A DNA stretch of 64,000 bases from positions 1 to 64,000 of IMG/VR virus record IMGVR_UViG_3300042511_000879. One strand, written 5' to 3'. A program made the translations under genes and the position numbers. The notes under the pieces are model-generated. The model was given only the letters and a program-made list of their open reading frames with translations. It was not told the origin of the DNA and did not search any database. Shown here one piece after another: positions 5,510-50,520 of the stretch; the stretch's first letter is position 1, and the number at the start of each line of letters is the position of its first letter.

Positions 5510-7432
5510 TTATCTGTTAAATCTTTTTGCAATTTCAGCACCTAATTCAGTAGCGTCATAACCTAGCGTTTGAGTTGTTTCAACCACTGATTCATTTACC
5601 ATAGCGATTTTTTCCATTACTGGAGCAACCTCTCTAAGGTCTCTAGTTTGCCAGAAGTTTGCAACTTGGTAAGCTGTTTCTAATTTATGATATTTAGATT
5701 GTGCTACTATTTGGTTTTTCTTACCTTCAGAACATTTAGCCCAAGTATCATGGTATTCAGTTGGCATTAATTTGATAACATTAGGTGTGTTGTTAGTTTC
5801 TACAACTCCTGATAATGAAGTGTTCCATAGAGCTAAAATTTGTCCTTCAGTAAGGTAACCTCTTCCTTCAACTGCGCTTACAACTTTAGATTTTTCTTCA
5901 ATAGTTAATGTATTAAATTCATTTACTTTCTCTTCAGAGATAAATTTAAAGAATGTTGGATTTTCTGATTTTTTAGAATTTACCTTTTCAACAATTGCTT
6001 CTAATTTAGAAGTAATTGAATTTTTGTAAGCTTCCATTTGGTCAACTTGTTTACCAGCAGCTTCTCCTTCACCTTCAAGGTCTAAGTCTTTTTCTACGTC
6101 TTCTGGTTTTCCAGTGATTACATTACCATCAGCATCAACTACATCAACAGTAACATCTTTAGTAGCAGTTTTAATGTCTTCGGCAGGAATTCCTGCTTCA
6201 GTTCCATCATTTGCTTCTGTAATTTCTTTACCAGCAGCATTTCCTTTACCAGCAAGTTTTATGTCTTTTGCAACATCTTCTGGTTTTCCAGTGATTACAT
6301 TACCATCAGCATCAACTACATCTGGAGAAACATCTTCAGTTTCATCTTTAAGAGCTTCAGCTGGAATTCCTGCTTCGTCTTCTAATAATAGGTTAGTATT
6401 AACTGTTTCTGCAACGTATTCTGCGTATTCAGTTACTTTCTCTAAGTTCTCTCTTAAATATTCAGTATATTTAATTAAGTTGTCATAAGAAGTAGAACCT
6501 TCATTGTAAGATTCAGCTAAATAGTTAGTGTAATTTTTGATAGCATCAACGCTTTCAGCGATATGCTCAGAATATTGAATACCTTGATCAACTTTTTCTG
6601 CAAGTGTTTCTGCATATTGAATACCTTGGTCTGCTTTTTCAGCAACGTGTTCTGAATATGCGATTGATTCTTCTAATTTCTTAGCTAAATAATCGGTATA
6701 TTCTTTTAATGATTGTACTTGAGAACTAGTAGACTCTGCTTCTGTTAAAGAATTCATACTTTCTTTAATAGATTTGATTTCTTCAGAAAGATATTTAGAG
6801 TATTTATTAAAATCCTCAGTCGTAATAAATTTAGACTCTGCCATTTTTGTTTCGTTTATATTTTCGATTGATTGTTTTTTGTTTTCTTTATTTATCTCGT
6901 AAATAAATAGGTCGTTTCCTTCATTAACAAAACCATAAGCTTCATTAACTCTTTTCAATTCAGCGTTTTCAAACCCAGGGTCTGCAACTAAATCGTAAGT
7001 AAACAATTGTTTGATTTTTACAGTTCCATTAGATTCAACTGCACCAGCTGCTCTACTTGAAATTTGTAATGGAACTCCAGCATCTACAAGAGCTTTTGCC
7101 TGTCTTCCTGCATCAGTATCTAATAGTCTGATACGTCCTTTAACTTGTTTTGTCTCTGTATCATAAGTAAGTTCTTCAATAATATGTGATACATTTTTTA
7201 AAGAAACATCAAATGTTTGTGGGTGGTCTAATTCACCTAATAGCTTAGATGATTTAATTTTGGCCTGTAGAGCTTCAATTTGCGGTAAGTATTCAGATTC
7301 AGTATAGATTCGGTTATTACGATTTTTCTTATCGATTTCTCCAAAGATACCCTCTAGAACATAAGTCCCACCTTCTTGTTTAAACTCTAATTCCGTTGAC
7401 GATCTTTCTAAGATCAGTAAGTTATTAGTCAT
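5510..7432 (-). CDS. Prohead protease (gp21) fused to a scaffold/core-like domain (gp22-like)
   Basis: N-terminal LEGIF..NRNNRIY, GELDHP, ISSRAAG, TYDLVADPG; long acidic helical repeat C-terminal region. Confidence 0.88.
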   Translation of the reverse strand: MTNNLLILERSSTELEFKQEGGTYVLEGIFGEIDKKNRNNRIYTESEYLPQIEALQAKIKSSKLLGELDHPQTFDVSLKNVSHIIEELTYDTETKQVKGRIRLLDTDAGRQAKALVDAGVPLQISSRAAGAVESNGTVKIKQLFTYDLVADPGFENAELKRVNEAYGFVNEGNDLFIYEINKENKKQSIENINETKMAESKFITTEDFNKYSKYLSEEIKSIKESMNSLTEAESTSSQVQSLKEYTDYLAKKLEESIAYSEHVAEKADQGIQYAETLAEKVDQGIQYSEHIAESVDAIKNYTNYLAESYNEGSTSYDNLIKYTEYLRENLEKVTEYAEYVAETVNTNLLLEDEAGIPAEALKDETEDVSPDVVDADGNVITGKPEDVAKDIKLAGKGNAAGKEITEANDGTEAGIPAEDIKTATKDVTVDVVDADGNVITGKPEDVEKDLDLEGEGEAAGKQVDQMEAYKNSITSKLEAIVEKVNSKKSENPTFFKFISEEKVNEFNTLTIEEKSKVVSAVEGRGYLTEGQILALWNTSLSGVVETNNTPNVIKLMPTEYHDTWAKCSEGKKNQIVAQSKYHKLETAYQVANFWQTRDLREVAPVMEKIAMVNESVVETTQTLGYDATELGAEIAKRFNR

Positions 7433-7502: not shown

Positions 7503-7853
7503 TTATAGACCGGCTAACGGATCCTCTTCTTCTCCACCTGCATCGCCTTCTGAATCTTTTTCAGCGTCCTTTTCTTTTTGAGCCACTTCTTCTTGATAAT
7601 CGTTAAAAAATTTAACTAGAGTAAACATATCCTCTTCGGTAAACGCTGTATTTCCGTATTCTTTATAGAAATATTCTTTAAATTCTTTTTCACTTTTTGA
7701 GGACAATATAGTCCCTAAAATTTCAGTAGATTTAATTTCTTTTCCTGAGTCAAGAGTTACATCATCAACTACTACTTTTGAATCTTCTCCTGCATCAATT
7801 GCATCTTCTTGAAGAGAGCTAGTAAATTCTTCAAATGTTTTAATTATTTTCAT
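7503..7853 (-). CDS. Small acidic prohead/internal protein with CTS-like leader
   Basis: MKIIKTFEEF leader; lies between portal and protease, the T4 gp67/68 position. Confidence 0.65.
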   Translation of the reverse strand: MKIIKTFEEFTSSLQEDAIDAGEDSKVVVDDVTLDSGKEIKSTEILGTILSSKSEKEFKEYFYKEYGNTAFTEEDMFTLVKFFNDYQEEVAQKEKDAEKDSEGDAGGEEEDPLAGL

Positions 7854-7874: not shown

Positions 7875-9464
7875 TTACATTCCCATCATTGGATTTTCCT
7901 CTTCTGGTTCGGCAGCTTTCTTTGCAGCAGTTCTGGCTTTATATGCATCATTAGCTGCTTTATCATCTGGAGAGAGTTTAAGGTATCTATCAACTAAGAA
8001 GTCCATATCAAAATATGGAGTTTCTTCCATTGTCATTGGATCTGTTTTAACCAGTGAATCTTTCATCGTACTAATAAAATCAAGTCGCTTTTGCATGATT
8101 TCCATTGTCTTTAATTCAGAGAACATATTATCCTCATTAAATCTTAGTGCAATTTGAGTTCTAAATCCTGCATCCTCTTTAAATTCTGGAAATTTAAGAC
8201 ACATTTGAATCCAAAGGGGTTTAATCAATATCTCTTGGAATGAACTACGTAAACGATTAATAAATTTACTGAATTTAATCTCATCTCTAATCATACCATC
8301 AGCAGCTAGATTGAAATCTCCACCTCCATCTTCATACATGAATCTATTGTAAGGAATTTTTGAAACTGCTTTAAGTTTATCTGAGAAGTATTTTAATGAT
8401 TCAGTGTCGCTTAATTCTGGACCTTCTCCACCCAAGGTTTCAATCTCAGGTTGTTCTCCATCCTTGCTAGGTAACCAATATTCTTTGTTAAATTGTAACA
8501 TTGGTTTACCGTTAGTTGTAAGAGATGCACTATCCCAATCAAAATCTACAACTTCTTTATAGTTATTCATTAACTGAGCAAGGGATTGCTTTGCTCTTGT
8601 TTTAGATTTACCACCAACTGGTATAATAAATTTCATTCTATAAGATGAATTTGTAACAGCCCAAATAACTCTGGTATGCTCCATAATTCTCATTAAGTTG
8701 AATGCTCTTACAAGTCGCTCAAGGTAAGAAACCCTTGATGCTGTAGTAATCGAAGAGTATGATATGTACACAATCTGTGAATCATACAATTTTCTCTGTT
8801 TAACTGGATCGTCTTTAAACTGAATCCAAACTTTTTTACCATCTTCATGGTTATATCCTGGAACCAATGTGATTGGATCAATTTCTTTAAATCCAATAAC
8901 ATCTGACATTTCAGGATTATAAATAATCTCAAATGATAGATAACCATCAATTAACCATTTTCTAAAAAAATACCATGCTGATTGGTCTAGATTGAATCCA
9001 AAATATTGATAGAGGTCTCTATATGCTTTATTAAGATATTTCTGCACATCTTCAGAAACTTCCATACCGATAATCTCTGGATTGGCCATGAAGTTTTTGC
9101 TATCATACACAATTGACTCATCGCAAAGTATATCTAAGATGTCTTCAATTTCATCATGTTGTGCAAATGCTCTAAGTTCATCTCTTTTACCACGGTATGC
9201 TTGGTCAAAAAATGGAATATTTTTACGCATTGTAGTATCAGCCATCGAAAGGGCTGCAAATGCGCCATACATGTCATCACTATCAAGACCTGTTGGGTTC
9301 ATTTGGCCATAACCAATTGCATCTTCTACCGGTCCGATTGCTTGAGATTGTCTAAGCACCAAATCGTCATAGTACATACCAAAAGAAGATAACTTCTTAA
9401 GAGTACTACTTAGGTTAAAAGGTCGCTTAGTCAATGGACCATTTCTTTGTACAAATCCTGCCAT
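7875..9464 (-). CDS. Portal protein (T4 gp20)
   Basis: FRKWLIDG, SYLERL, MEHTRVIWAV, EYWLP..DG..PEIETLGG, RDEIKFSKFINRLR. Confidence 0.93.
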   Translation of the reverse strand: MAGFVQRNGPLTKRPFNLSSTLKKLSSFGMYYDDLVLRQSQAIGPVEDAIGYGQMNPTGLDSDDMYGAFAALSMADTTMRKNIPFFDQAYRGKRDELRAFAQHDEIEDILDILCDESIVYDSKNFMANPEIIGMEVSEDVQKYLNKAYRDLYQYFGFNLDQSAWYFFRKWLIDGYLSFEIIYNPEMSDVIGFKEIDPITLVPGYNHEDGKKVWIQFKDDPVKQRKLYDSQIVYISYSSITTASRVSYLERLVRAFNLMRIMEHTRVIWAVTNSSYRMKFIIPVGGKSKTRAKQSLAQLMNNYKEVVDFDWDSASLTTNGKPMLQFNKEYWLPSKDGEQPEIETLGGEGPELSDTESLKYFSDKLKAVSKIPYNRFMYEDGGGDFNLAADGMIRDEIKFSKFINRLRSSFQEILIKPLWIQMCLKFPEFKEDAGFRTQIALRFNEDNMFSELKTMEIMQKRLDFISTMKDSLVKTDPMTMEETPYFDMDFLVDRYLKLSPDDKAANDAYKARTAAKKAAEPEEENPMMGM

Positions 9465-33540: not shown

Positions 33541-33568
33541 TTATACTTGTTTTATTTAAAAAGTTTCA
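33541..33568 (-). promoter_or_regulatory. TGAAAC-N17-TATAA promoter (representative copy, upstream of ino1)
   Basis: Identical spacing at 2071, 24262, 37433, 37721, 54921; near matches at 20641 and 10990. Confidence 0.7.
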
Positions 33569-38539: not shown

Positions 38540-39076
38540 TTACTTTTGGTCTATTTGTATGATTTCAGAACCTCTGATTTCAACGTTATTTTCTCCAATT
38601 TCGGCATCATATCCACCGTAAATGTCTTCTCCACCTGCAATTGCAGTATTTAACATACCTCCTAATTTGTTCTTAAATTTAGAACCATCAACATCATCCA
38701 TAAAACCAATATTAATTACAAAGTCTCCGGGAATTCTAATATGTAAAGGAGCACCATCTCTATTCAATCTATTAATAGTATCTGGTTCCCATGAAAGATT
38801 TAGTCCTTTGACGTGTACATATACAACTTGGTCCATATCTTTTACAACCTTTTTAATTTCATCTAGGATGATTTTTTCGGCAGTTTTGGTAAAATCCCAC
38901 CATGCACCATTAACCTCTTCTAAAGTATCTGCTGCATCTCCTTCAAAAGTGGCAGTTTCAATTTCTTTTTTAAAAGCCTGCATAACTTTACCAATAATAC
39001 CTTTAGAGGTATAAGGTCCAGTCATTCTGTATGCTTTTTCATTTAAGAAATCTTCAAATAATTTTATGTGTTTCAT
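38540..39076 (-). CDS. CTS-leader hypothetical protein
   Basis: MKHIKLFEDFLNE. Confidence 0.75.
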   Translation of the reverse strand: MKHIKLFEDFLNEKAYRMTGPYTSKGIIGKVMQAFKKEIETATFEGDAADTLEEVNGAWWDFTKTAEKIILDEIKKVVKDMDQVVYVHVKGLNLSWEPDTINRLNRDGAPLHIRIPGDFVINIGFMDDVDGSKFKNKLGGMLNTAIAGGEDIYGGYDAEIGENNVEIRGSEIIQIDQK

Positions 39077-39522
39077 TATTTTATAGGATTTTTATTCATT
39101 GCAGCGTCTTGGTTTTTCTCTTGCCAATTGTAAGATACTTTGTCTTCAGTAATAGGTCCACCTTTTGCCCATGTGTAACATGTTCGAGCTGAATGGCATT
39201 TAAAATGATGCATCCAACAGTATCCTAATTTACCATCGTCGTCACTAATCTCGCCAGGCATACAGTCTAACATTCTTGGTGATATGTCGAAAGCAACACA
39301 ATTTCCACATGTTGATTTTTTAGCAGCTTCAACACTAGTATTCCAATGATCAGCTATATGCTCCCAAAAACCTGCAGGTTCATCAACATTAAGAGGTCCA
39401 TATTCAATAAAGTCTGCTTTAATTGCGCGGTCTCTATTATTAGTGTTAACCTTTAAGTCCTTTGTCGGTACAGGGCAACTAGTTGCTTCTTTAAATTCTT
39501 CGAAAAGTTTTATAGTTTTCAT
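39076..39522 (-). CDS. CTS-leader Cys-rich protein, HiPIP-like metal-binding motif
   Basis: MKTIKLFEEFKE; CGNC..F...GYC..H.FKC...TC..W. Confidence 0.65.
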   Translation of the reverse strand: MKTIKLFEEFKEATSCPVPTKDLKVNTNNRDRAIKADFIEYGPLNVDEPAGFWEHIADHWNTSVEAAKKSTCGNCVAFDISPRMLDCMPGEISDDDGKLGYCWMHHFKCHSARTCYTWAKGGPITEDKVSYNWQEKNQDAAMNKNPIK

Positions 39523-39523
39523 A

Positions 39524-40117
39524 TTATTTTACCTTAGGGTATTTAGTCTTAATTTCTTTATAGAATTTCTTGTAATTAGTAGCATTCATGTGGTCTTCAG
39601 CTGCTCTAAGCAAATCATCTAAAGAAGTCCATTGAACATCCGCTAATTGATCTTGTGTTGTTGAAACTTGAGCCATACGATCTAAAATTCCAAAAATAAT
39701 ATCATCTGTTAATTTTGTTTCGGTACTTGGTTTTTCTTTACCTGCTGCTCTTTTAAGTGTCCACCAATCAACTTTCTTTGGAATTTGATATGATACAATT
39801 CCTCTTTGTTGGTCATTGGGACTAGTTTCTCCAGGTTTACCAATATTACTTTTAATATTATCCAGGTCTAAGTTATCATCAAATCCTTTTAATGCCTTTT
39901 GAATATCTTTAGTTGAATCTATATCTGCCATATCTGGTTCACTCCTAAGAAACATTCTATCAGTTGAACTCATATTAAAATAAATTCCTTTAACAGGTGA
40001 AATAGCTTTGATAAATTGTTTTTGATACTCATCAGAATCTAGACCATTGTTATATCCTGGAAAGGTTTGCATCCTAGCTTCACCTACAAATTGTTCAAAT
40101 AATTTGATATGTTTCAT
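39524..40117 (-). CDS. CTS-leader hypothetical protein
   Basis: MKHIKLFEQFVGE. Confidence 0.75.
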   Translation of the reverse strand: MKHIKLFEQFVGEARMQTFPGYNNGLDSDEYQKQFIKAISPVKGIYFNMSSTDRMFLRSEPDMADIDSTKDIQKALKGFDDNLDLDNIKSNIGKPGETSPNDQQRGIVSYQIPKKVDWWTLKRAAGKEKPSTETKLTDDIIFGILDRMAQVSTTQDQLADVQWTSLDDLLRAAEDHMNATNYKKFYKEIKTKYPKVK

Positions 40118-40118
40118 C

Positions 40119-42860
40119 TTACCAAGCGTAATTTTTAGCGTCTACTTTCTTAACGTAGTCAACGATTGTTTTAGAACTTTCTTTCATTCTACCTTCATAG
40201 AATTTTCCGCTATAACCAGATGCAGCCTCTTTTTCAATATCTACAGCGTATGCAACATATCTGTTATATTCATCTAGGATGTTTTTCATTAAGTTAGAAG
40301 CATCGCTCATTTTGATTTCTCTACCTCTAGGGTCTAGTCCAATAATAAGTTCTCCATATTTTCCTTTTTCAGCTTTAGTTAGGGCATCTTTGATTTGTGT
40401 AGCAAGAGTATCAATAGCTCCTAATACAATTGAATCCATCGGCATTTCTGAAGCTTTTTGGGCTAATATTTGGTTATAACGGGCTTTGTTTTCTGCTTTA
40501 AAGTCTTTATCACTTTTAAAAGCAGTAGCTCCACGTTTATCATCGGCTCTTTTTGATACTAATGACGTTGTAGAATATCTTGCTTTAAGGACATCTAAGT
40601 CAATAACATAAACAGTATCGGCTAATTCAGCTACTTTAGTAAGTGAAGTGATTCCAGAACCATCGTATCTTTTACTGTCTCTTTTGTCAAATCCTGCTGC
40701 ATCTTCTCTAGAACTTGCTTTTGATATAGTTTCAGTTTTTGAGTATCTATTATATCCGGTAGAGTACCATTCATTTTGTCCATTAGTCATTGCTAATAGG
40801 GTGTTTGATTGGATAATTCCATTATTGTATCTACTTGGAATTCTACCAGCTTCAATATATGGATTCTCTTTTTGGTTAGTTACTATATAGAAGTAAATTG
40901 CGTTAGCTCTTTTTTCTTTACGAGCAGTTTGAGGGTCCATTTCAATAATGTCATAATCTTCGATTTGGTCAATTGCCAATTTTGAGAAGTTATAGAATGC
41001 TCCTGCAAGGTCTTTAGTACCTGCACTTCCTACAGAGAAAAGGTTAGATAATTTAGCACTTTTAAATGCCTCGTTTAATGTACCTTCATTTAATTTGTTT
41101 TCAACAAATTCTGCGAAAGATTCGTAAATAAATTTTGTTTTCATATCGTTGTTATTTTTGTTTTCGTCTAAGTCAATAACCCAAGCATATTCAACGTACT
41201 TGATAGCGTCTTCAGGATTTACATCCCATTTAAGTGCCGCATCTAATACGATTTTTCTTGTAATTTTGCTATTTGGGTATTTTGCAATTTCTTTTTCAAA
41301 TCCTCCAGGAACCCAAATCTTAGGTGCCTTAGTAGTAGCTTCAAATATTTGCTTTAATCTTCCTTTTAATAGTTTTTTAACCTCTATTGACATATTGGTT
41401 TTATTATTATCGAATTCTTTAGAATTTCCTAATTCTTCTCTATTAAAAGCATTTAATTTATCATCAAAATACTCATCAGCATCAAGGTCTTCTATATTAT
41501 CGTCAACATCTAACCATTCATCATCTACAAATTGTTTAGCTAATTTTTTATAGTTTAATCCTTCATTCATAGTAGCTTCAGAAACCATAACATTTTTAAG
41601 GATTCTTGAACCTGTTTTTGATAGGGTAATTCCATCTTCAGATACATTAAAACACTGAGCGTTTCTTCTCAACCATCTTTTAGAATCTGTAGTCATTTCT
41701 TTAAGAATATTATTAAAATCTTCTTGAGAAAGTTTACCATCTTTAATAGCTTCTAGCATTTTGTTACGAACTTTAGCAGCTTTACCTACAGTAACTGCAG
41801 GATTTTTATCAGTATAATGCCTTTTGATTGTGATGTTTCTTTCATTAACTACTGATTCTTTAATAGCATTTTTAACATCGCCTAATGTAGATATTTCCAT
41901 GTTGGTTGCAACTGTTAAAAAATCAAATGCATCTTCATATTCTCCACGATCCCAGAGTTTGTCAAATTCTTCAATATCATCTTCATCACCGATTAGAGCA
42001 TATCCTGGATCAATTCCAATTTCTTTATTAATAAAGTCGATAGTTTTTTTAATGTCAGATTTTTTAAATCCAGTTTCATTAACTACTGATTCATTTAAAC
42101 CAAACTCTCTGATATCGTTTTGTCCATTGTCAAATGATTTTTGAATAGCCGCTAATGCTTCTTTTCTATCGCTTGCAGATTCAAACCCAATTTCGTCATC
42201 GCTAAATGCTTTTGAATATTTTTTCCATGAGTCTTTTGATAAATCAGCAACTTTTCTTAAGTTGATTACTGTAGATTCTATACGGTATTTTGAAGCAGTT
42301 CCGGATGGGTAATTGTTAGTTGATAAACCTAAAACTAAATTAGCCTCATCTAAAGAAGATTCTTTAATAATTTTATCATCTTTATGGAAAATGTATTCCA
42401 TTTTCTTACCAGTTTTCTTAAATTCACCGCTATAAGAAACTTCTCCATCTTTATTTTTAAAAACTTTATCAACTACAAATTCTCCATCAGATGAAGCGTA
42501 AGGAATTACAATACTTCCTTTTTTAACAGTAGCTTCATTTGTAACTGATTCTGATAATTTATTAAGATTTTTAACAATAGTATCTACTGAATCATTCCAT
42601 TTACCATAAACAGGACTTCCAGGTACGGCATTGTTTACAACATCACCATTTGCATGTATAGTATAAGAACCTCCATCGAACTCTTCTCCATTACAATCGA
42701 TGTCGAATGAATCCTCTTCTAATGTTCTAGTGTTAACGGTGCATTTGCTACCATCTGCCTTTGAAAGGGCTTTAGCATAAAGTTCTGCAACTTTTTTAGT
42801 TTTTTCTACAGATAACCCCATCGGTTTAGAGCTTTCGTTTAAGAATTGATCAAAATTCAT
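40119..42860 (-). CDS. Modular internal-head polyprotein (913 aa)
   Basis: MNFDQFLNE leader; repeated ESVTNE/ESVVNE linkers; late promoter. Confidence 0.65.
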   Translation of the reverse strand: MNFDQFLNESSKPMGLSVEKTKKVAELYAKALSKADGSKCTVNTRTLEEDSFDIDCNGEEFDGGSYTIHANGDVVNNAVPGSPVYGKWNDSVDTIVKNLNKLSESVTNEATVKKGSIVIPYASSDGEFVVDKVFKNKDGEVSYSGEFKKTGKKMEYIFHKDDKIIKESSLDEANLVLGLSTNNYPSGTASKYRIESTVINLRKVADLSKDSWKKYSKAFSDDEIGFESASDRKEALAAIQKSFDNGQNDIREFGLNESVVNETGFKKSDIKKTIDFINKEIGIDPGYALIGDEDDIEEFDKLWDRGEYEDAFDFLTVATNMEISTLGDVKNAIKESVVNERNITIKRHYTDKNPAVTVGKAAKVRNKMLEAIKDGKLSQEDFNNILKEMTTDSKRWLRRNAQCFNVSEDGITLSKTGSRILKNVMVSEATMNEGLNYKKLAKQFVDDEWLDVDDNIEDLDADEYFDDKLNAFNREELGNSKEFDNNKTNMSIEVKKLLKGRLKQIFEATTKAPKIWVPGGFEKEIAKYPNSKITRKIVLDAALKWDVNPEDAIKYVEYAWVIDLDENKNNNDMKTKFIYESFAEFVENKLNEGTLNEAFKSAKLSNLFSVGSAGTKDLAGAFYNFSKLAIDQIEDYDIIEMDPQTARKEKRANAIYFYIVTNQKENPYIEAGRIPSRYNNGIIQSNTLLAMTNGQNEWYSTGYNRYSKTETISKASSREDAAGFDKRDSKRYDGSGITSLTKVAELADTVYVIDLDVLKARYSTTSLVSKRADDKRGATAFKSDKDFKAENKARYNQILAQKASEMPMDSIVLGAIDTLATQIKDALTKAEKGKYGELIIGLDPRGREIKMSDASNLMKNILDEYNRYVAYAVDIEKEAASGYSGKFYEGRMKESSKTIVDYVKKVDAKNYAW

Positions 42861-42884: not shown

Positions 42885-44756
42885 TTATATATCTTTGTTA
42901 ATAAATTGTTCGAATGTCATGATTTCATTAGTAACTGATTCTGTAACAACTCCCATTGCATCTTCAATTTTAGATTTAAGTTCATTATACATCGAATGAA
43001 CTGCCTTTGGTGTTAGATTGTTAAATTGTTTTTCATTACCATCTAATAGAGCATTTCTAACTGCAGTAGCCGAAATATCATCGTCAGTTCTTGGAATTTC
43101 AAAAAGTCCAAAATCAGCTCTACAATTTAATTGGTCTCTATAAGAATCATTATTAACTTGATAACCATAGCTTGTCATTCTATCACTTCCCGTTCCCCAA
43201 AGTACTGGCTCATATTTAGGTCTCATTTCATTAAACATGATATCGATACCTCCAGTTGGAACTACAAATATTTCTTTTAAGAATGGATATTGTTTTTTAA
43301 CATGATTGAACATATCGATTTGGGTCTTTTCATCGTATGGTCTGCTAAATTCATCACCTTTCTTTTTGGTTTTTGATTTAACTAGGAATACAACTACTGG
43401 AAATCCATTCTCTTTATGTATAGTTTCTAAAACTTTTGCATGGCCTAATGTAAACGGCTGGAATCTTCCAACAAACATATTTACTGGTTGTTTTCCTTGT
43501 TCAACATGAGTAAGTTTAAGTGCCTCGTTTAAATTAACTGAAGATTTGATTTTATCACGCAACATAAAATTTTGGTAGTCATAGATTGCATTTTCATCAG
43601 TGTTTTCAACAAATATTTTATCGTTGATTTTTTCAATAATTTCGTTTAAACGTTCCATAGTATCTTGGTCTATTAAATCTGAAGTTTTAGTTCTTTTCTT
43701 TCTAAAAGAACCTAAAATCATTTTAAAAAGTTCTGCTAGAATATCGTTAGAAACATATTTTAAGGTTTTTTCATCGGTAATATACTTTGAGTTTAATTTA
43801 AAAGATTCTGCTGATGAAAATTCAGCGCTTTCAAAATTAACTCCAATATATTTTGAAGAGTTCTTGTCAACATATTCATTAAATATAATTGACATTATTT
43901 CAAGATATCGATAATCTGCTCGGTCATCTTCAAGCTGTACTTCATCGATCTTAAATTGAGTTATAAATTCTAAAAAGTCGGTGACTGCAATTTGATACAT
44001 GTGACTTGAAGAGTTATCAATTGGATTTTTTCTTGTAAAATCTTCTAATTTAAAAGATTTTATAGATTTTTCATCGATAAAATTAACAACCAATCCATCG
44101 AATTCCTCATCAATATCAGAATTTAGGGCAGTTTCAAAAGCACTAGGATTAAAAAGTTTAACTATTTTACTGGTAAAACTTAATTTGTCCTTTGTTTCTG
44201 GTAAATAGTCGAATGATTCACTAAATTCTCTATCACTCATTCCAAGCAATTCTAGTAACTCATCTCTTTGTAATTGAGATAAATAGCCATCAAATAATAT
44301 GCTTGGCTGTTGAACATCAAGAATTTTTGCCCATTTATTTAAGATTACCGGGTCATTAATAGTTTTCTTAACTTTATTACCTTCTCCAAGTTGTTGGATA
44401 TGCGTTAAGATTAAATTATTTTTTGGAGTTTTTATGTATTTAATTTTAGATACATTAACTTCTGGTAGGTATTCAAAACCAAATCTCCAATCAATTGGCA
44501 TTTGATTTTTAGTAGCACTTGGTAAACTTTGCATGTAGTTGATTGCAATCTCATATAGAGATATAATTGTTCTATCAACTAAATTTAGTTTGTCTGAATT
44601 TGAAGATTTAAAATATTCAAATCCATCAAGATTTCTTTTAACAAGAAATGTAGGCGCAGAAACTTTCTCAGTTACTAACACCCTATTTTTTAACATCTCA
44701 ATAAAGGTTTCTCTATTGGTTTCGTTAAAATACTCTCTTAATTTTTGTAATGCCAT
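42885..44756 (-). CDS. Cytidyltransferase-like (HIGH nucleotidyltransferase) protein with degenerate ligase-like N-terminal domain
   Basis: FVGRFQPFTLGH, GSDR, ISATAVR; N-terminal VTEKVSA...FDGLVV. Confidence 0.75.
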   Translation of the reverse strand: MALQKLREYFNETNRETFIEMLKNRVLVTEKVSAPTFLVKRNLDGFEYFKSSNSDKLNLVDRTIISLYEIAINYMQSLPSATKNQMPIDWRFGFEYLPEVNVSKIKYIKTPKNNLILTHIQQLGEGNKVKKTINDPVILNKWAKILDVQQPSILFDGYLSQLQRDELLELLGMSDREFSESFDYLPETKDKLSFTSKIVKLFNPSAFETALNSDIDEEFDGLVVNFIDEKSIKSFKLEDFTRKNPIDNSSSHMYQIAVTDFLEFITQFKIDEVQLEDDRADYRYLEIMSIIFNEYVDKNSSKYIGVNFESAEFSSAESFKLNSKYITDEKTLKYVSNDILAELFKMILGSFRKKRTKTSDLIDQDTMERLNEIIEKINDKIFVENTDENAIYDYQNFMLRDKIKSSVNLNEALKLTHVEQGKQPVNMFVGRFQPFTLGHAKVLETIHKENGFPVVVFLVKSKTKKKGDEFSRPYDEKTQIDMFNHVKKQYPFLKEIFVVPTGGIDIMFNEMRPKYEPVLWGTGSDRMTSYGYQVNNDSYRDQLNCRADFGLFEIPRTDDDISATAVRNALLDGNEKQFNNLTPKAVHSMYNELKSKIEDAMGVVTESVTNEIMTFEQFINKDI

Positions 44757-44777: not shown

Positions 44778-45245
44778 TTATGATGAACTTTTTGATACTT
44801 CAAATACTCTTCGTTGTTCGTCTAAATAAACTTTAGTATCTACCCAAATAGAACCTAACTTTGTTTCTTTCTTAGGGTCAGTTATATCAGTAAATGTCAA
44901 TAGGGTTACATTAACCTCTTCTCCTCTTTTAGACTGTAGTGCTAATTGATAATCATTCAACCAATACTGTGAATTGTGAATTCTGTATTTTGGAGTATCG
45001 ATGATATTTCCATGTGGTTTTACTTCAAAATATTGATAGTGAACAAACATAGTTTCTCCTTCAAAATCCCAAATCCATTCCATTGCCGTATCTGTTGTTT
45101 TTGCAGTAAGTGGCATTAATTTCTTAAAGAATGTTTCGTCTAATGAATTAGATTTCTTTAATACTTCAGGTTTAAAGTTATTAATTGTTGATTCATATAG
45201 TTGTCTAGTTTCAACAAATTTTTCGAATAGTTTTACGTGTTTCAT
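44778..45245 (-). CDS. CTS-leader hypothetical protein
   Basis: MKHVKLFEKFVE at 45245. Confidence 0.7.
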   Translation of the reverse strand: MKHVKLFEKFVETRQLYESTINNFKPEVLKKSNSLDETFFKKLMPLTAKTTDTAMEWIWDFEGETMFVHYQYFEVKPHGNIIDTPKYRIHNSQYWLNDYQLALQSKRGEEVNVTLLTFTDITDPKKETKLGSIWVDTKVYLDEQRRVFEVSKSSS

Positions 45246-45246
45246 T

Positions 45247-46536
45247 TTATCTTCCATATTTTATAATTCCCATCAACTGATTAATCGCAGCGAATGTTCC
45301 TGTTAATTTGTACATGTGTCCTTTGTATGAAAATACAATACCTTCAGTCGGTATAATAGATTGGATTCCTCCAATTCTTTCAAGTCTATCAAGTTCTTTT
45401 GCAACTTTCTCGATTTGAGTAAGGTCTCCATTTAGTTTAATTTTATCGGCTTCAGTTCTGATTTCATTATGTAGCCTTTGCATTTCTTTTTCAGGAGAAG
45501 CAGCAACAAAGTTACTTGCATTCTTTAAGATAACACTTCCAAGTTCTAAGAAAAGGTCTTCAAATGGTCTAATGTTTTCTTTGAATTTTACTTTAAAGTC
45601 TTCTTTGTCAAATTTCTTAACAGCATCTGATTGTTGTTTTGTTAATTCTTTGTCTAAAGAGCGCATGTTTAATGTTTTCTTATCATCATATGCCCATCTA
45701 AGTAATAATCCTTCTTTAATATTTTGTGGATATTCTCCGAATAAATTTTCAATTTGCTCTCTCCACCACATTTCATGGTATCTTGCAACTGCATCAGCAT
45801 CTGTTAATTTATAACGATTTTTAAGAGCATCAAGTTTTCCTAGGAATTTAGACTGATTCTCTTCAAAATTCATATCTTTTTGTAGTTTAATAACCTGCGG
45901 AGGGATTATTGTAAATGTTTTTCCAATATCAGCGTTTAGGGATTTAAGTACTCCAGTAACACTTTTTGCCGCACTATTGTCATCTCCAACTATATTTCCT
46001 GCACCATCAGTTTTCTTGATACCATGGAATTGAATTACATCAACATCGTAGTGAATTACATTAGGATTTGCAGAATATATCAACTCCATGTTCATGAAGT
46101 TTAGGCCATTCTGGAACACTTCCTCTTGTGTTTTTGCCGGCAACTTTATAAGCAGGGTTGCTAAATCAGCGGCTGCAAATTGGAAAGTATCTTGTACTAA
46201 TTTGCTAGCATGTCCCTCAAATTTATTTTGGAAATCCTTAAGGCTCATAGGATTTTGCAACTCAGTTTTATTTCTGGCAAATTTAACTTCACCATTTTGA
46301 ATAGTTGCAAATACGTTTTGACCGTCTGTTTTTTCAGTAGGTTCCTCTTCAAAGTTCAATTCACCTTGAAGTCCACCAATAATCATATTCTTGAAGTCTC
46401 CGAATGTTAGGTCATTATTATCGAATGGATGGGACATGTGTCCAGCAGCTCCACCTTCTAATAGTAACTGTTCATTCAATTTAACTTCATACTTTTCAGT
46501 TATGAATCGATTAAAATTAAGGATTCTTGTTTTCAT
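45247..46536 (-). CDS. Polynucleotide-ligase-fold nucleotidyltransferase (DUF6267-like)
   Basis: EGGAAGHMSHPFD, motif I TEKTDG, motif IV PTEGIVF, YKLTG.F..INQ. Confidence 0.65.
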   Translation of the reverse strand: MKTRILNFNRFITEKYEVKLNEQLLLEGGAAGHMSHPFDNNDLTFGDFKNMIIGGLQGELNFEEEPTEKTDGQNVFATIQNGEVKFARNKTELQNPMSLKDFQNKFEGHASKLVQDTFQFAAADLATLLIKLPAKTQEEVFQNGLNFMNMELIYSANPNVIHYDVDVIQFHGIKKTDGAGNIVGDDNSAAKSVTGVLKSLNADIGKTFTIIPPQVIKLQKDMNFEENQSKFLGKLDALKNRYKLTDADAVARYHEMWWREQIENLFGEYPQNIKEGLLLRWAYDDKKTLNMRSLDKELTKQQSDAVKKFDKEDFKVKFKENIRPFEDLFLELGSVILKNASNFVAASPEKEMQRLHNEIRTEADKIKLNGDLTQIEKVAKELDRLERIGGIQSIIPTEGIVFSYKGHMYKLTGTFAAINQLMGIIKYGR

Positions 46537-46543
46537 ATTTTAA

Positions 46544-47092
46544 TTACTTTGCAACTCTGTTGCTTTTAATGTTTTCCATTGCGATATCATCAATCAATCT
46601 TGTAAAAGAACTTAGGGTTGCAGCGGTATAAAATCCATCTTCACCAGGACCTGCATTGTTTGCTCCTACTTTATAAGCTTGAATGTGTCCAGCAAGTTCT
46701 AATGCTGCATCTCCCCATCCGGTGTCATTTCCTCCATTAGATTTAGCACGTTTAATTGCATCATTAGTAAGTGCTACTAAATCGTTTGCACCTCTAAATG
46801 CTTCGGGTTTTTTACTACTTTTCTTACCAGAAACGTTATTGTGTTCAATATCATCAAGGCCCATATTATTAACCAGTTCTTGGAATAATGATGGTGTTTG
46901 TGGACCATACCATTTGTCTGCCTTTGGGTCAATAGTACTATCAATATATTTTCCAAGGTCTGTTAGGTAATCAAGTACATTTTGACCATTACCGCCACGT
47001 GCAAATATTTTTTTAGAGGCGTCTTTTACGTATTTTACGTAGTCATTTTTTCCTTCGTTAATAAATTGTTCGAATAATTGTATGTGTTTCAT
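46544..47092 (-). CDS. CTS-leader hypothetical protein
   Basis: MKHIQLFEQFINE. Confidence 0.75.
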   Translation of the reverse strand: MKHIQLFEQFINEGKNDYVKYVKDASKKIFARGGNGQNVLDYLTDLGKYIDSTIDPKADKWYGPQTPSLFQELVNNMGLDDIEHNNVSGKKSSKKPEAFRGANDLVALTNDAIKRAKSNGGNDTGWGDAALELAGHIQAYKVGANNAGPGEDGFYTAATLSSFTRLIDDIAMENIKSNRVAK

Positions 47093-47430: not shown

Positions 47431-50400
47431 TTAAGATTCTTGAGCTATCATTGCATCGATAACATCAGATGAAATCCATCCTTTTGCTTTAACAAATTCT
47501 TTTGCAAGTTTTAAAACTTTCTTTTCTCCAGCAGATGTTACCTCATTTTCTTTACCGTTTTCATTATTATCATTCCAATCTTCAACGCAACCTTCTACTT
47601 CTTGCTGTAGTTGAAAATTACCTGGATTTTTACTTTTTGTAGAATCTTCATGATAATCTTCCCAGTAGTTTGCATCAAATGCTTCAGTAACAACTGATTC
47701 TCCAAGAGAACTTGTTAGCATTCCAACCGCAGCTCCATAATCTCCATCACATTTTTTAAGAATTCCATCAACTACTTCTCCAGCTTTAGCTTCATCAAAG
47801 TCTTCTCCGAATGCTTTTTTCAAAACAGCCATCGCATATTCTTTAAATTCGTCATCAGATTTAACTTCAGCTTCATTAACCGTAGATTCAAATACTAACG
47901 TAACATCCTTAACGTTAAGAGTTTTAACTAAATCTCCTAATTTATCATATAAATCATTTAATTCATCTTCAGTGTGGTGTTTATATCCTTTCTTTAAGTT
48001 TATATTTGCACTACCAAATTTAGCCATATAATCATCTTTTCCTTCAGTAACTACTGATTCTTTAGCAGATCCAGCGGCTTTAGCTCTTTTTAATTGGGCT
48101 TTTTTGATTCTGTCCGTTTCTTCTCTATGGTCTCTTAATTTCTTTAATTTCTTTAATTGCTCAGCTTTACGAGTTGCTTCAGCACTTGGACCAGAACGTT
48201 GATAACCACTTTCAGTTACTGTAGATTCAGCAACATTGTTTTCCCACCATGTTTTAAGTTCATTAAAATCAGATTTACCCATGTTAGAAATCATGTATTC
48301 GATAATATCATTGTCGTAATCTTCAGCCTCATCTCTGTAACCTCCTGGAGTATCGATATAATCTTTACCCATGATTCTTTTGATTCTTTGTTCTGGCATA
48401 CCATCGATTTCCTCACAGAATTCTTCAAAGTCTTTAGTTGATTTGAATTTTTCAGCTTCATTAACTACTGATTCATTTGCGTAAGCTCCTAATTCGCTGA
48501 ATTTAACTTTTTTACCTGCTTTTTCTTCATCATTTTCATCAGAATGCGCTAATAAACCTGCATCAAATAATCTTTTAAGAACTTCTCCTTTAACCAGACT
48601 ATAGTCGATAGCATTACTTGAATTTTCCCAAGTATCACCTACATATTCTGGATCGATCCAACCATAACCTGATTTAATATCTTTAATTAAGGTCTGTACA
48701 TCTTTGTCAAATTGCTTAGTACCTTCATTAACTACTGACTCGATCAATTCCATATTATATGCATTTGAAATGTCAGTTTTAATTTCTCCAGTTTCTTTTG
48801 AATGCAACTTCATAGTTTTACCATCAGGATTTAATTTAATGAATGTAACTTCACCGTAGTCTGATGTGTATTTGTGGTTTGGCTTTAAGTCTTTTGCTTT
48901 ACCTTCGTAAACAGTTCCAGCAACCTCATCATAATTGTTAAATTTCTTAGCAGATTTTTTAACAGTGTTTAATTGTTTAATGATAGAATCAATTACTCCA
49001 GGGTCAATATCATTTCCAGCATTTGCACTATTAAATAAGTTGGTTAAATTTTTAGATGCTAAGTATAATTCGTTACCAATAACATCTTTTGGTAATCGGT
49101 TGAATGCTTCAGAAACGGTAGATTCATTACATAATGAATAAAGTTCTTGCGCAATCTTTTTTGCTTTTGAACCAGAATGTCCGTAAGTTTCTACAGTATC
49201 TAATGCATCTTCCATCGACATACCATGTAGTTCTTCCATATCACCATCTCTTTCATCTAAAAGATCGTCTAGTATATTTGAAGCCTCATCAGCCTCTTTT
49301 GATTCAGAAACTACCAATTCTAGGTCTTTATCTTTATCAGCAATTGTTGCATCAAGTTCAGCTTCTAGGGCTTTCTTTTGAGCAGTCATTTCTTTTAATT
49401 TTCCAAGTAATGATTCTTTAGCAGAACCTTCAGCAACTTTCCAATTTTGTGCGGTAGCTTGCATTGAAGTTGTTAACTTAGACCAGTCATATTGAATTTT
49501 AGCAATTGAACGAGCTTCATCAATAGATTCTACTGATTCATTTTTCTTTTGAGATGCTTTTAAATCTTCAAGTTCTTTTTTCAATTTAGGGTCTAATTGT
49601 CTTTCAATTCCCCAGTTAAAACTTGCATTTATTAACATATTCAATGGTAAGTTTTCATTTTTCTTACCGAATACGGATGTTTTAATCCAGTTTAAATAAT
49701 GTTCAGCTAAATCTTTTGATAATTTAATACCTTCTGCTCTTGAAGAATCTCCATCAACAATAGATTGAAGTATCTTTTTAGCCATTCCGTGTGAACCTTC
49801 ATTAACTACAGATTCTTGTATAAAACTAATATCTTTAAGATATAATTCATAGTCAGAACCATCTTGTGTATATCCAGTAAAAGAATCTCCTTTGTCATCT
49901 TTTAATTCTTTAGGGTCAACTGAATACCAGTCATTTCCAACAAAAACTTCTACAGGTTTTCCACTAGTTTGAGTATATAAGTCATGTGCAGTTTTACCTG
50001 TGAATTTGGTTCTTTTAGCCTCTTCGACTTTGTAAGTTTCACCATCAACTTCGAATTCATCTTCGTCATCTTCTTTTGCTTTTTTAACAGCAGCTCCGAA
50101 CGCATTACCTTCGTTTTTTTCGCTTTCGCTAAGACCAGTGTCTTTCTTAATGGTTACTTTATATTTTTTACCATTAAATTCAAACTCAGATTTTCCATCT
50201 TGTTTAGCTTTACTGGCTGCAAAAATAAATGCATTTCCCTCTTCTAGTTTTTTAGGTTCTCCTAATTTATTAAGCTCATCTTCAATATCTTCTGCCTCAT
50301 CTTCTGAAACTGTTCCAAACATTTTGTTAATTAGGGCTTGTTTTTTCTCTTCATCTAACTCAGATAGAGAAGTTAAACCCATTTCATCAAGGATTGCTCC

Positions 50401-50520
50401 AATTTTACCAACAGTTTCCTGTCTTTTTGCATTGTTTGTTTCTCTTAGTTTCATTGTATTTTCCTGATTCTTAACTTCAGTAAAACTCTTAAATGAAGAG
50501 ATTTTGTTAACTTGTGCCAT
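47431..50520 (-). CDS. Modular internal-head polyprotein (1029 aa)
   Basis: KISSFKSFTE leader; about 9 ES[V/T]V[N/T/S]E linkers separating 60-100-aa modules; late promoter. Confidence 0.65.
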   Translation of the reverse strand: MAQVNKISSFKSFTEVKNQENTMKLRETNNAKRQETVGKIGAILDEMGLTSLSELDEEKKQALINKMFGTVSEDEAEDIEDELNKLGEPKKLEEGNAFIFAASKAKQDGKSEFEFNGKKYKVTIKKDTGLSESEKNEGNAFGAAVKKAKEDDEDEFEVDGETYKVEEAKRTKFTGKTAHDLYTQTSGKPVEVFVGNDWYSVDPKELKDDKGDSFTGYTQDGSDYELYLKDISFIQESVVNEGSHGMAKKILQSIVDGDSSRAEGIKLSKDLAEHYLNWIKTSVFGKKNENLPLNMLINASFNWGIERQLDPKLKKELEDLKASQKKNESVESIDEARSIAKIQYDWSKLTTSMQATAQNWKVAEGSAKESLLGKLKEMTAQKKALEAELDATIADKDKDLELVVSESKEADEASNILDDLLDERDGDMEELHGMSMEDALDTVETYGHSGSKAKKIAQELYSLCNESTVSEAFNRLPKDVIGNELYLASKNLTNLFNSANAGNDIDPGVIDSIIKQLNTVKKSAKKFNNYDEVAGTVYEGKAKDLKPNHKYTSDYGEVTFIKLNPDGKTMKLHSKETGEIKTDISNAYNMELIESVVNEGTKQFDKDVQTLIKDIKSGYGWIDPEYVGDTWENSSNAIDYSLVKGEVLKRLFDAGLLAHSDENDEEKAGKKVKFSELGAYANESVVNEAEKFKSTKDFEEFCEEIDGMPEQRIKRIMGKDYIDTPGGYRDEAEDYDNDIIEYMISNMGKSDFNELKTWWENNVAESTVTESGYQRSGPSAEATRKAEQLKKLKKLRDHREETDRIKKAQLKRAKAAGSAKESVVTEGKDDYMAKFGSANINLKKGYKHHTEDELNDLYDKLGDLVKTLNVKDVTLVFESTVNEAEVKSDDEFKEYAMAVLKKAFGEDFDEAKAGEVVDGILKKCDGDYGAAVGMLTSSLGESVVTEAFDANYWEDYHEDSTKSKNPGNFQLQQEVEGCVEDWNDNNENGKENEVTSAGEKKVLKLAKEFVKAKGWISSDVIDAMIAQES

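What the first reader, a model, noticed from the sequence alone, without database searches (positions are those of the whole stretch)
40119..42860. Second polyprotein and an exact 18-bp linker repeat shared between the two polyprotein genes
The 913-aa protein has SESVTNE, KESSLDE, NESVVNE, KESVVNE, EATMNE and EGTLNE linkers, and an internal leader-like segment (MKTKFIYESFAEFVENKLNE) that looks like a fused former gene start. The DNA 18-mer ttcattaactactgattc is identical at 41841, 42075 and 48457, with 1-3-mismatch copies elsewhere in both genes. Identity at synonymous positions suggests modules may be inserted or excised by recombination at the linker, like a cassette array within a reading frame.
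Basis: partly seen in the sequence, partly recalled or inferred. Interest (0 to 1): 0.68.

Follow-up and report, generated by a model that had tools for sequence, protein, structure and literature searches.

The report
Shuffled cargo polyproteins in jumbo phage
Two long genes of a 234-kb freshwater phage encode strings of small unrelated protein modules joined by a repeated six-residue motif that looks like a cutting site for the phage's T4-type head protease; related phages gain, lose and swap whole modules exactly at these joints, which may let the lineage reshuffle the proteins it probably packs into its head and injects with its DNA.

Summary
The 913-aa ORF, its six linkers, the internal leader-like segment and the exact 18-mer at 41841, 42075 and 48457 are all present. 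Codon bias explains the 18-mer identity poorly (p about 0.001-0.01).

The window lies in a 234-kb lake-water jumbo phage with a T4-type head operon: portal, S77 protease, gp23-like capsid protein. At least 21 of its genes start with MKHIKLFEQFVNE, which resembles the T4 capsid-targeting sequence MKTYQEFIAE. The E-S-V-V-N-E linkers share the ending of that leader and fit the gp21 cleavage rule (L/I-x-E). They occur only in leader-bearing proteins.

In more than 40 related contigs, module content differs and whole modules are present or absent. DNA identity jumps from about 55% to 97% exactly at a linker. The two exact 18-mers flank module D, which some relatives lack. Modules also appear in the other polyprotein or as stand-alone leader-bearing genes. 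The internal leader aligns with the N-terminal leader of stand-alone relatives.

Cleavage and packaging are inferred, not shown. I rate this a new variant of the T4 internal-protein system.

The parts
40119..42860 (-). Polyprotein gene P0001 (913 aa): short leader MNFDQFLNE followed by modules A-B-C-D-E-F-G
   Evidence: no Pfam or PHROG family for the whole protein or its modules
42834..42860 (-). N-terminal leader MNFDQFLNE, conserved as MNF[NDE][QE]FLNE in almost all homologues; a short form of the genome-wide leader
42534..42833 (-). Module A (residues 10-109), ending in linker ESVTNE. Only about 50% identical to A' of relatives whose other modules are 83-98% identical
42345..42533 (-). Module B (110-172), ending in ESSLDE. 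Present in L009 and L010, absent from L005-L008, L011 and L013
   Evidence: loose end at 42349 in run X11
42075..42344 (-). Module C (173-262). Its last six codons are the exact 18-mer at 42075-42092. Also found directly behind a canonical leader in a 187-aa gene of L168
41841..42074 (-). Module D (263-340), bracketed by the two exact 18-mers (42075-42092 and 41841-41858). Absent from L007, L008 and L009. A 41%-identical copy sits in a P0002-type protein of L056
41562..41840 (-). Module E (341-433), conserved in all homologues. The predicted fold is winged-helix-like, on weak matches
41333..41569 (-). F1: a 237-bp in-frame insertion found only in this phage and its identical copies, flanked by the 10-bp direct repeat GAAGCTACTA (41570-41579 and 41333-41342). 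It creates the EATMNE site
   Evidence: the F1-less joint 41332->41570 is seen in lake runs X7 and X11
41070..41144 (-). Internal leader MKTKFIYESFAEFVENKLNE-GTLNE (573-597), conserved in all homologues down to 40% identity. It aligns with the N-terminal leader of stand-alone G genes. Relatives L011 and L035 carry extra modules inserted within it
40122..41069 (-). Module G (598-913), the conserved C-terminal anchor. AF2 model has pLDDT 82; no known fold or family was found
47431..50520 (-). Polyprotein gene P0002 (1029 aa), nine modules. Linker 18-mer copies at 49798, 48724, 48457 (exact), 48043 and 47683
42885..44756 (-). P0003 (623 aa): leader-like N-terminus (MALQKLREYFNE), a cytidylyltransferase-like domain, then C-terminal ESVTNE plus the conserved tail IMTFEQFINKDI
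38540..40117 (-). Three small leader-bearing genes: 38540-39076 (MKHIKLFEDFLNE), 39076-39522 (MKTIKLFEEF) and 39524-40117 (MKHIKLFEQFVGE)
44778..47092 (-). Further leader-bearing genes between the two polyproteins: a leader at 45216-45245 (MKHVKLFEKF), 45247-46536 (MKTRILNFNRFITE) and 46544-47092 (MKHIQLFEQFINE)
5510..7432 (-). Prohead protease of the T4 gp21 family (Peptidase_S77) fused to a scaffold-like acidic coiled-coil region. It carries its own VNE and VVE sites
3819..5351 (-). Major capsid protein, gp23 family. Its N-terminus MANLINE|AEI is conserved as MIKLINE|AEI in the 52%-identical LR756500 protein
7503..7853 (-). 116-aa leader-bearing protein (MKIIKTFEEF...) between the portal and protease genes, at the position of T4 core proteins gp67/gp68
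   Evidence: T4 gene order from established knowledge
7875..9464 (-). Portal protein, T4 gp20 type

Best explanation
P0001 and P0002 are capsid-targeted polyproteins of a T4-like-headed jumbo phage.

Step 1 (inferred). An N-terminal F-x-x-F-hydrophobic-N-E leader takes the whole chain into the prohead core. This leader is the lineage's counterpart of the T4 capsid-targeting sequence.

Step 2 (inferred). The gp21-family prohead protease cuts after the Glu of each E-S-V/T-V/T-N-E linker and after the leader. This releases 7-9 small, mutually unrelated proteins that stay in the head and enter the host with the DNA. One conserved module looks like a winged-helix DNA binder.

Step 3 (shown by comparison). 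The linkers are the joints at which evolution edits the genes. Whole modules are inserted, deleted, replaced and moved between the two polyproteins and stand-alone leader-bearing genes, always in frame and always at a linker or leader.

Step 4 (inferred). The short, near-identical linker-coding DNA (18-mer GAATCAGTAGTTAATGAA, core GAATC...AATGAA) supplies microhomology for recombination. Selection keeps only junctions that preserve a cleavable site on both sides.

Step 5 (shown). The internal segment MKTKFIYESFAEFVENKLNEGTLNE is homologous to a gene-start leader, now fused in frame in front of module G.
For: Phage context.
- 234-kb virus record.
- Peptidase_S77 hit of 46 bits, above the cut-off.
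- gp23 family hit at E 2e-42.
- gp20-type portal.
- Gene order is portal, small leader protein, protease/scaffold, capsid protein.

Leader.
- 21 exact-pattern hits, all on the coding strand, none in the control.
- The peptide is conserved while its codons vary.
- At least 117 stretches in IMG/VR carry it.
- T4 CTS is MKTYQEFIAE. The T4 gp21 motif is L/I-x-E, and the CTS is a 10-19-aa propeptide.

Linker-leader link.
- All 18 linker motifs in the genome lie in 6 proteins, and all 6 have leader-like N-termini.
- Modules begin right after ...NE whether they follow a linker or a leader. Examples are G in L054, P0039 and P0040; C in L168; and m5 in L121.
- The capsid protein starts MANLINE|AEI, and this is conserved in a 52%-identical relative.

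Shuffling.
- Module architectures differ among relatives.
- DNA identity steps from about 55% to about 97% at the linker, and L010 diverges inside the next linker.
- Module D is bracketed by exact 18-mers.
- m5 sits in P0001-type genes of L012, L106 and L169; D sits in a P0002-type gene of L056.
- Lake metagenome contigs carry alternative junctions at 41332/41570, 42075 and 42349.

Codon identity among linker copies exceeds the codon-bias expectation.
Against: - No protein-level data exist. Cleavage, packaging and ejection are all inferred from motif similarity.
- The polyprotein genes lie among replication genes, not in the head operon.
- P0002's N-terminus (MAQVNKISSFKSFTE) is only loosely leader-like.
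- Some relatives have Asp instead of Glu at the P0003 C-terminal site.
- The closest huge-phage relative, LR756500, lacks the leader pattern, so the system is lineage-specific.
- Orthologous linkers show no extra synonymous conservation.
- F1 was inserted at a 10-bp microhomology outside a linker. DNA identity of linkers may therefore be a by-product of shared ancestry rather than the cause of recombination.
- No module has an assigned function.
Confidence: 0.6

Rival explanations
1. The proteins are uncleaved multi-domain 'beads on a string'. ESVVNE would be only a conserved flexible inter-domain linker. Module shuffling is real, but there is no proteolysis and no packaging.
For: No direct evidence of cleavage exists. 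Pfam and PHROG are silent on function. The genes lie among replication genes.
Against: The linker shares its hydrophobic-N-E ending with the N-terminal leaders and fits the gp21 rule. Linkers occur only in leader-bearing proteins. The same module starts right after NE behind either a leader or a linker. A plain flexible linker has no reason to keep an invariant terminal Glu and a hydrophobic P3 residue across 40%-identical homologues.
Confidence: 0.2
2. The DNA 18-mer plays no mechanistic role. Illegitimate or microhomology recombination happens anywhere, and selection keeps only in-frame junctions at cleavable linkers. The exact repeats would be residual shared ancestry plus codon bias.
For: Orthologous synonymous identity is no higher in linkers than in modules. 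F1 was inserted at a 10-bp non-linker microhomology. With the polyprotein genes' own codon usage, the excess is only p = 0.01-0.08 for some statistics. Linker codons differ among relatives.
Against: ESVVNE copies share 87% of their codons against 50-57% expected (p <= 0.0012). Module D is flanked by two perfect 18-mers, and its absence in relatives leaves one copy. Crossovers fall within the shared GAATC... stretch.
Confidence: 0.3
3. The apparent module variation is a metagenome assembly artefact: chimeric contigs joined at the short repeat.
For: All relatives are metagenomic contigs. One apparent stand-alone gene (P0022) proved to be an artefact of a scaffold gap.
Against: 18 bp is shorter than the usual assembly k-mers. 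Identical architectures recur in independent samples: L003 = L004; L014 = L015 = L016 = L029; L026 = L027. Reading frames stay open across all junctions. Novel modules X and Y occur in several contigs and in an independent run.
Confidence: 0.03
4. A dedicated site-specific recombination system (integron-, shufflon- or DGR-like) uses the linker as its recombination site.
For: The arrangement is cassette-like, with a short conserved repeat at every junction.
Against: Nothing I scanned around the locus looked like a dedicated recombinase; the only recombination-type hit was a RuvC-like resolvase. I did not scan every neighbouring ORF. The linkers are coding, variable and lack inverted symmetry. 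Junctions also occur at leaders and at an unrelated 10-bp microhomology.
Confidence: 0.03

Closest known systems
T4 internal proteins IPI/IPII/IPIII and Alt with the capsid-targeting sequence (CTS), processed by prohead protease gp21
   Same: A short N-terminal leader of similar composition (MKTYQEFIAE against MKHIKLFEQFVNE) ends in a hydrophobic-x-Glu site. The phage has a gp21-family protease and a gp20/gp23 head. Many otherwise unrelated small proteins share only the leader. Alt-like processing at both ends is mirrored by P0003.
   Different: T4 IPs are single-module genes cut once. Here, up to nine modules are strung in one reading frame with internal sites. The leader family has 21 strict matches, or about 30 counting looser forms, in one genome. 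There is no sequence homology to T4 IPs, and nothing has been shown experimentally.
Polymorphic IP loci of T-even phages (IP genes identified by their shared signal sequence; cited as ref. 27 in PMC12373910)
   Same: A variable set of injected proteins shares a conserved leader and sits in an accessory-gene hotspot.
   Different: There, whole genes differ between phages. Here the exchange unit is an in-frame module inside a gene, and the joint is a cleavage-site linker as well as the leader.
phiKZ / 201phi2-1 / SPN3US inner-body and ejection proteins cut by a gp21-like protease
   Same: These are jumbo phages with many head-internal proteins. Cleavage is C-terminal to Glu after a short motif, sometimes at multiple sites per protein.
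   Different: The motif there is S/A-x-E, and the cuts mainly remove propeptides. There is no repeated six-residue linker, and no report of module cassettes or a uniform N-terminal leader.
Polyvalent proteins of phages and conjugative elements (Iyer et al. 2017, PMC5512222)
   Same: Many disparate domains sit in one polypeptide that is thought to be delivered with the DNA and possibly released by proteolysis. The authors themselves draw the analogy to RNA-virus polyproteins.
   Different: Polyvalent proteins carry recognisable enzymatic domains and usually an embedded peptidase (zincin-like MPTase and others). P0001 and P0002 have no Pfam domain and no embedded peptidase. Their release would depend on the separate prohead protease acting at uniform linkers.
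Polymorphic toxin loci with exchangeable C-terminal cassettes (Rhs, CDI, MuF)
   Same: Conserved anchor regions are combined with exchangeable modules, and recombination occurs at a conserved junction motif.
   Different: In those systems only the C-terminal tip is swapped, from silent downstream cassettes. Here, internal modules of an expressed reading frame are gained and lost, and no toxin or immunity pairs are evident.

Membership tests
T4-type CTS-bearing head-internal (ejected) proteins | N-terminal propeptide of about 10-19 residues ending in a gp21-type site (hydrophobic-x-Glu) | tested here: met
   MNFDQFLNE in P0001 and MKHIKLFEQFVNE in at least 21 genes. The T4 rule comes from PMC9026906. 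This is a test at sequence-pattern level only.
T4-type CTS-bearing head-internal (ejected) proteins | The phage encodes a gp21-family prohead protease and a T4-type prohead (gp20, gp23) | tested here: met
   PF03420 at 46 bits against a cut-off of 27. PF07068 at E 2e-42. Portal tblastn hits to gp20-type portals.
T4-type CTS-bearing head-internal (ejected) proteins | Protein physically incorporated into the prohead core and cleaved there | not testable with these tools
   This needs virion proteomics or a protease assay. No cultured relative carries the genes.
T4-type CTS-bearing head-internal (ejected) proteins | Ejected into the host with the DNA | not testable with these tools
   No experimental system is available.
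T4-type CTS-bearing head-internal (ejected) proteins | Single mature protein per gene (one cut after the CTS) | tested here: not met
   P0001 has 7 and P0002 at least 8 internal linker sites. This is the respect in which the genes depart from the known kind.
Polyvalent proteins (Iyer et al. 2017) | Two to fifteen recognisable conflict-related domains in one polypeptide | tested here: inconclusive
   The proteins are clearly modular (7-9 units), but no module matches any Pfam or PHROG family. One module is winged-helix-like on weak fold matches.
Polyvalent proteins (Iyer et al. 2017) | Embedded peptidase domain (MPTase, assemblin-like, LonC or DD) for self-processing. This is frequent rather than universal. 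| tested here: not met
   No peptidase domain in P0001 or P0002. The only S77 domains are in separate genes.
Site-specific cassette systems (integron-like) | Dedicated recombinase plus a structured recombination site | tested here: not met
   Nothing I scanned around the locus looked like a dedicated recombinase; the only recombination-type hit was a RuvC-like resolvase. I did not scan every neighbouring ORF. The linkers are variable coding sequence.

The most novel reading that the evidence does not exclude
A widespread lineage of freshwater phages runs an in-frame 'cargo cassette' system. Any small protein bounded by hydrophobic-N-E protease sites can be plugged in behind the MKHIKLFEQFVNE capsid-targeting leader or into one of two polyprotein scaffolds. 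The roughly 18-nt linker-coding sequence would serve both as the protease site and as the portable homology that mediates exchange. One targeting signal could then deliver a rapidly reshuffled arsenal of a dozen or more injected (probably anti-defence or DNA-binding) proteins. This organisation has not been described for any phage.
Probability: 0.35. Interest if true: 0.8.

Novelty: new variant of a known kind. Interest (0 to 1): 0.62.

Why it matters
Injected head proteins are a phage's first line against host defences. In T4 each is a separate gene, and only three have known targets.

If these polyproteins are processed as proposed, three things follow:
- The capsid-targeting and gp21-cleavage logic would extend far outside the enterobacterial T-even phages.
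- A single targeting signal could load many different proteins.
- The exchange of such proteins would be seen to occur at the level of in-frame modules.

The work also yields two simple sequence signatures, a leader and a linker. These could be used to mine thousands of candidate injected proteins from metagenomes. They also suggest a design principle for loading multiple foreign proteins into T4-like capsids.

Tried and rejected
- blastn and tblastn of P0001 against 50,697 phage records found nothing.
- Pfam and PHROG scans of the whole proteins and of ten separate modules found nothing above cut-off. DUF4168 at 17-19 bits is below its cut-off.
- A PDB profile search with the G alignment returned nothing.
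- Fold searches with the G model (Foldseek PDB, BFVD, VIA wide) gave only generic helical-bundle matches. No fold is assigned.
- My first automatic clustering of modules collapsed into one family, because unsplit segments bridged modules. I replaced it with module-by-module tblastn.
- No paralogues of any module exist elsewhere in this genome.
- I tested whether linker DNA is under nucleotide-level purifying selection. It is not: 72% against 77%.
- The leader pattern is absent from the closest huge phage, LR756500.
- P0022 looked like a stand-alone G gene starting at the internal leader, but it is an artefact of an N-gap in its scaffold.
- Laying lake-metagenome contigs gave no joint that deletes D between the two 18-mers. 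Only the F1-less joint and loose ends at two linkers appeared, all from diverged co-occurring strains. Within-strain excision is therefore not shown.
- A literature search for the leader strings found no paper.
- No complex prediction was run.
Full report
1. What is there

A second ORF, 47431-50520, encodes 1029 aa with eight similar linkers. The ORF between them, 42885-44756, is a 623-aa cytidylyltransferase-like protein ending ...ESVTNE-IMTFEQFINKDI.

The 18-mer TTCATTAACTACTGATTC is exact at 41841, 42075 and 48457, with six further copies at 1-3 mismatches. That is 9 matches against 0.18 expected. On the coding strand it reads GAA TCA GTA GTT AAT GAA, which is E-S-V-V-N-E. Similarity does not extend into the flanks.

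2. Is the DNA identity more than codon bias?

I resampled codons for the real linker peptides using the genome's codon usage, and separately using the polyprotein genes' own usage. The five ESVVNE sites share 87% of their codons against 50-57% expected (p <= 0.0012). Three or more identical 18-mers has p = 0.001-0.01.

Between orthologous genes, synonymous identity in linkers (72%, n = 154) is no higher than in modules (77%, n = 4258; not significant). The within-genome identity is therefore not maintained by nucleotide-level selection. It is better read as shared recent origin of the linker copies.

3. Context

The window is bases 134133-198132 of a 234,467-bp IMG/VR virus record with about 32% GC. 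It occurs in lake-water metagenomes.

The window starts with a T4-type head operon:
- a gp20-type portal at 7875-9464;
- a 116-aa protein starting MKIIKTFEEF at 7503-7853;
- a Peptidase_S77 (gp21 family) protease fused to a scaffold-like region at 5510-7432;
- a gp23-family capsid protein at 3819-5351.

This is the order of T4 genes 20, 67/68, 21, 22, 23 (established knowledge). The closest relatives of these proteins are huge uncultured phages (LR756500, 38-58% identity), Lak megaphages and Tenacibaculum phages.

4. A genome-wide leader

At least 21 genes start with M-K-x-[IV]-[KQ]-L-[FY]-E-x-[FY], typically MKHIKLFEQFVNE. All lie on the coding strand, and the reversed-pattern control gives none. 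Several more have looser versions, including P0001 (MNFDQFLNE), P0003 (MALQKLREYFNE) and the small protein in the head operon.

The peptide is conserved while its codons vary, so selection acts on the peptide. The same leader is found in at least 117 stretches of IMG/VR. It is absent from LR756500, and no paper in the library holds the string.

It resembles the T4 capsid-targeting sequence MKTYQEFIAE. In T4 that sequence is a 10-19-residue propeptide that targets internal proteins to the prohead core, and gp21 removes it at L/I-x-E.

Almost every gene between window 38.5 and 50.5 kb carries such a leader. The polyproteins therefore sit in a cluster of putative head-cargo genes.

5. Linker equals leader end

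The linkers (E-S-V/T-V/T-N-E, and variants ending LDE, MNE, LNE, VSE or VTE) have the same hydrophobic-x-Glu ending as the leaders.

All 18 strict linker motifs in the genome fall in six proteins, and all six have leader-like N-termini.

The capsid protein starts MANLINE|AEI. This is conserved as MIKLINE|AEI in a 52%-identical relative. The protease/scaffold protein has VNE and VVE sites after its protease domain and near its C-terminus.

Where a module exists both inside a polyprotein and as the first unit of a stand-alone leader gene, it begins at the same residue, right after ...NE:
- G: TLNE|AFKSAKLS here, against MKHIKLFEQFINESDSSLNE|AFASTKLA in L054 (37% identity, E 1e-68) and in P0039 and P0040.
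- C: ESSLDE|ANLVLGLS here, against MKHIHTFESFLNENLNE|AKMDLGLS in L168.
- m5: ESVVNE|AEKFKSTKDF here, against MKHIKLFEQFINVNE|GFKNTKDF in L121.

This equivalence is my main argument that the linkers are processing sites. It remains an inference.

6. Modules come and go at the linkers

I cut P0001 at its linkers into a leader plus A (10-109), B (110-172), C (173-262), D (263-340), E (341-433), F (434-597) and G (598-913).

Thirty-five IMG/VR loci encode homologues of 437-982 aa. Among those with 83-98% identity in shared modules, the architectures are:
- A'-C-D-E-F-G (L006)
- A'-C-E-F-G (L007, L008)
- A'-B-C-E-F-G (L009)
- A'-B-X-E-F-G (L010)
- A'-X-E-F-G (L005)
- A'-X-D-E-F-[119 aa]-G (L011)
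- A'-C-Y-E-F-G (L013)

Every shared module is matched over its full length. More distant homologues consist of leader-E-(internal leader)-G only.

The two exact 18-mers at 42075 and 41841 bracket module D, which is 234 bp. L007, L008 and L009 look like the product of recombination between them, or this genome looks like the insertion product.

At nucleotide level, identity between this genome and L009 or L010 is about 55% through module A and switches to about 97% exactly at GAATCAGTTACAAATGA. L010 leaves the B-to-C path inside the next linker, after AAAGAATC, and continues into module X.

P0002 behaves the same way. m4 is absent in L009 and L040, and various subsets occur in L006, L008, L013 and L043-L046. 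In L042, m4 is inserted within m2.

Modules also change genes. m5 of P0002 lies inside the P0001-type gene of L012, L106 and L169. A D-like module lies in a P0002-type gene of L056. No module has a paralogue elsewhere in this genome.

7. An exception that informs the mechanism

This genome has a 237-bp in-frame insertion (F1, window 41333-41569) that all relatives lack; they read ...VMVSEATTKAPKIW. It is flanked by a 10-bp direct repeat, GAAGCTACTA, and it creates the EATMNE site. Microhomology-mediated insertion therefore does occur outside linkers, and the survivor carries a new site.

In relatives L011 and L035, extra modules sit between the tandem sites of the internal leader.

8. Population data

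I laid Logan contigs of four lake runs on the gene (2742 bases, within the operators' limit). The results were:
- the F1-less joint (41332->41570, 10-11 shared letters) in two runs;
- in one run, a contig that matches up to the 18-mer at 42075 and then continues into module X (reverse complement reads EYDVSG...);
- another contig that joins the A' end (…KKMMNESVV) to C at 42349, without B.

These contigs are 5-10% diverged, so they come from co-occurring strains. They are not excision products of one strain. No joint deleting D was seen.

9. The internal leader

(M)KTKFIYESFSEFVxxLNE...LNE|AF[KA]S is conserved in every homologue down to 40% identity. It aligns with the canonical leader of stand-alone G genes. 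It is preceded by an A-rich stretch (ENKNNND) that resembles the upstream regions of leader genes.

The 'fused gene start' reading is supported, and the fusion is old. Internal initiation at Met573 remains possible and was not tested.

10. Function of the modules

No Pfam, PHROG or PDB sequence match was found. All 54 database relatives of G are 'hypothetical'.

G folds confidently (pLDDT 82) into an alpha/beta domain plus a helical bundle, with no specific structural match. The conserved E module has helix-helix-helix-strand-strand topology, and its best, though weak, matches are all winged-helix DNA binders (E 0.02-0.3, probability up to 0.99).

Small, fast-evolving orphan modules are what one expects of injected accessory proteins, but no function is shown.

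11. Verdict

My best explanation adds that the joints are gp21-type cleavage sites and that the proteins are capsid-targeted cargo polyproteins. The shuffling is shown. Cleavage, packaging and the causal role of the 18-mer are inferred.

Compared with the known systems, this shares the logic of T4 IP/CTS and of polyvalent proteins. It differs in stringing many modules between uniform protease-site linkers and in exchanging them in frame. I therefore rate it a new variant of a known kind.

Noticed in passing
whole genome G000; in the window e.g. 24872-25204, 35590-35955, 38540-39076, 39524-40117, 46544-47092: At least 21 genes begin with the near-identical peptide MKHIKLFEQFVNE. It is conserved as protein, not as DNA. 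The same leader occurs in at least 117 IMG/VR stretches, and no paper in the library holds the string.
   Followed up: partly
window 42885-44756 (-): P0003 is a 623-aa protein with a cytidylyltransferase-like domain (residues 427-567) and a leader-like N-terminus. Its C-terminal tail IMTFEQFINKDI follows an ESVTNE site and is identical in all close relatives, while the site itself varies (TNE or TND). It may be an enzyme packaged and processed at both ends, like T4 Alt.
   Followed up: partly
G000:C1:1-1246 and 233191-234467 (outside the window): The first ~1.25 kb of the contig matches its last ~1.28 kb at 90-96% identity. This is an imperfect terminal direct repeat, so the record probably spans the whole genome although CheckV rates it 77% complete.
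   Followed up: partly
G000:C1:57227-57625 (-) (outside the window): A second, short (132-aa) ORF matches Peptidase_S77 (31 bits, above the cut-off), in addition to the 640-aa protease/scaffold gene.
   Followed up: no
window 29964-31154 and 33566-34627 (-): Two separate ORFs match the C-terminal (375-784) and N-terminal (12-349) halves of one PHROG family (phrog_17781, 795 positions). About 2.4 kb with two other ORFs lies between them. This may be a split gene or one interrupted by an insertion.
   Followed up: no
window 49800-50520 (-), P0002 residues ~90-165: The first module of P0002 contains an internal tandem duplication (EGNAFIFAASKAKQDGKSEFEFNGKKYKV / EGNAFGAAVKKAKEDDEDEFEVDGETYKV). 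Each copy is preceded by an x-x-E site (KLEE, EKNE).
   Followed up: no
window 35984-37408 (-): A 474-aa protein gives a very strong match to phrog_850, annotated 'RNA-binding protein' (E 6e-153). The homologue in L169 carries DUF2828/DUF7788. It lies just downstream of the cargo-gene cluster.
   Followed up: no
window 54075-54092: The three-mismatch copy of the 18-mer here lies in the ssDNA-binding protein gene and encodes DSVVNK. It is a chance resemblance, not a linker.
   Followed up: yes
G000:C1:48489-52444 (-) (outside the window): A second cluster of six leader-bearing genes lies here. Three of them contain one internal ESVTNE, ESTVNE or ESLTNE linker, so they are two-module mini-polyproteins.
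   Followed up: partly
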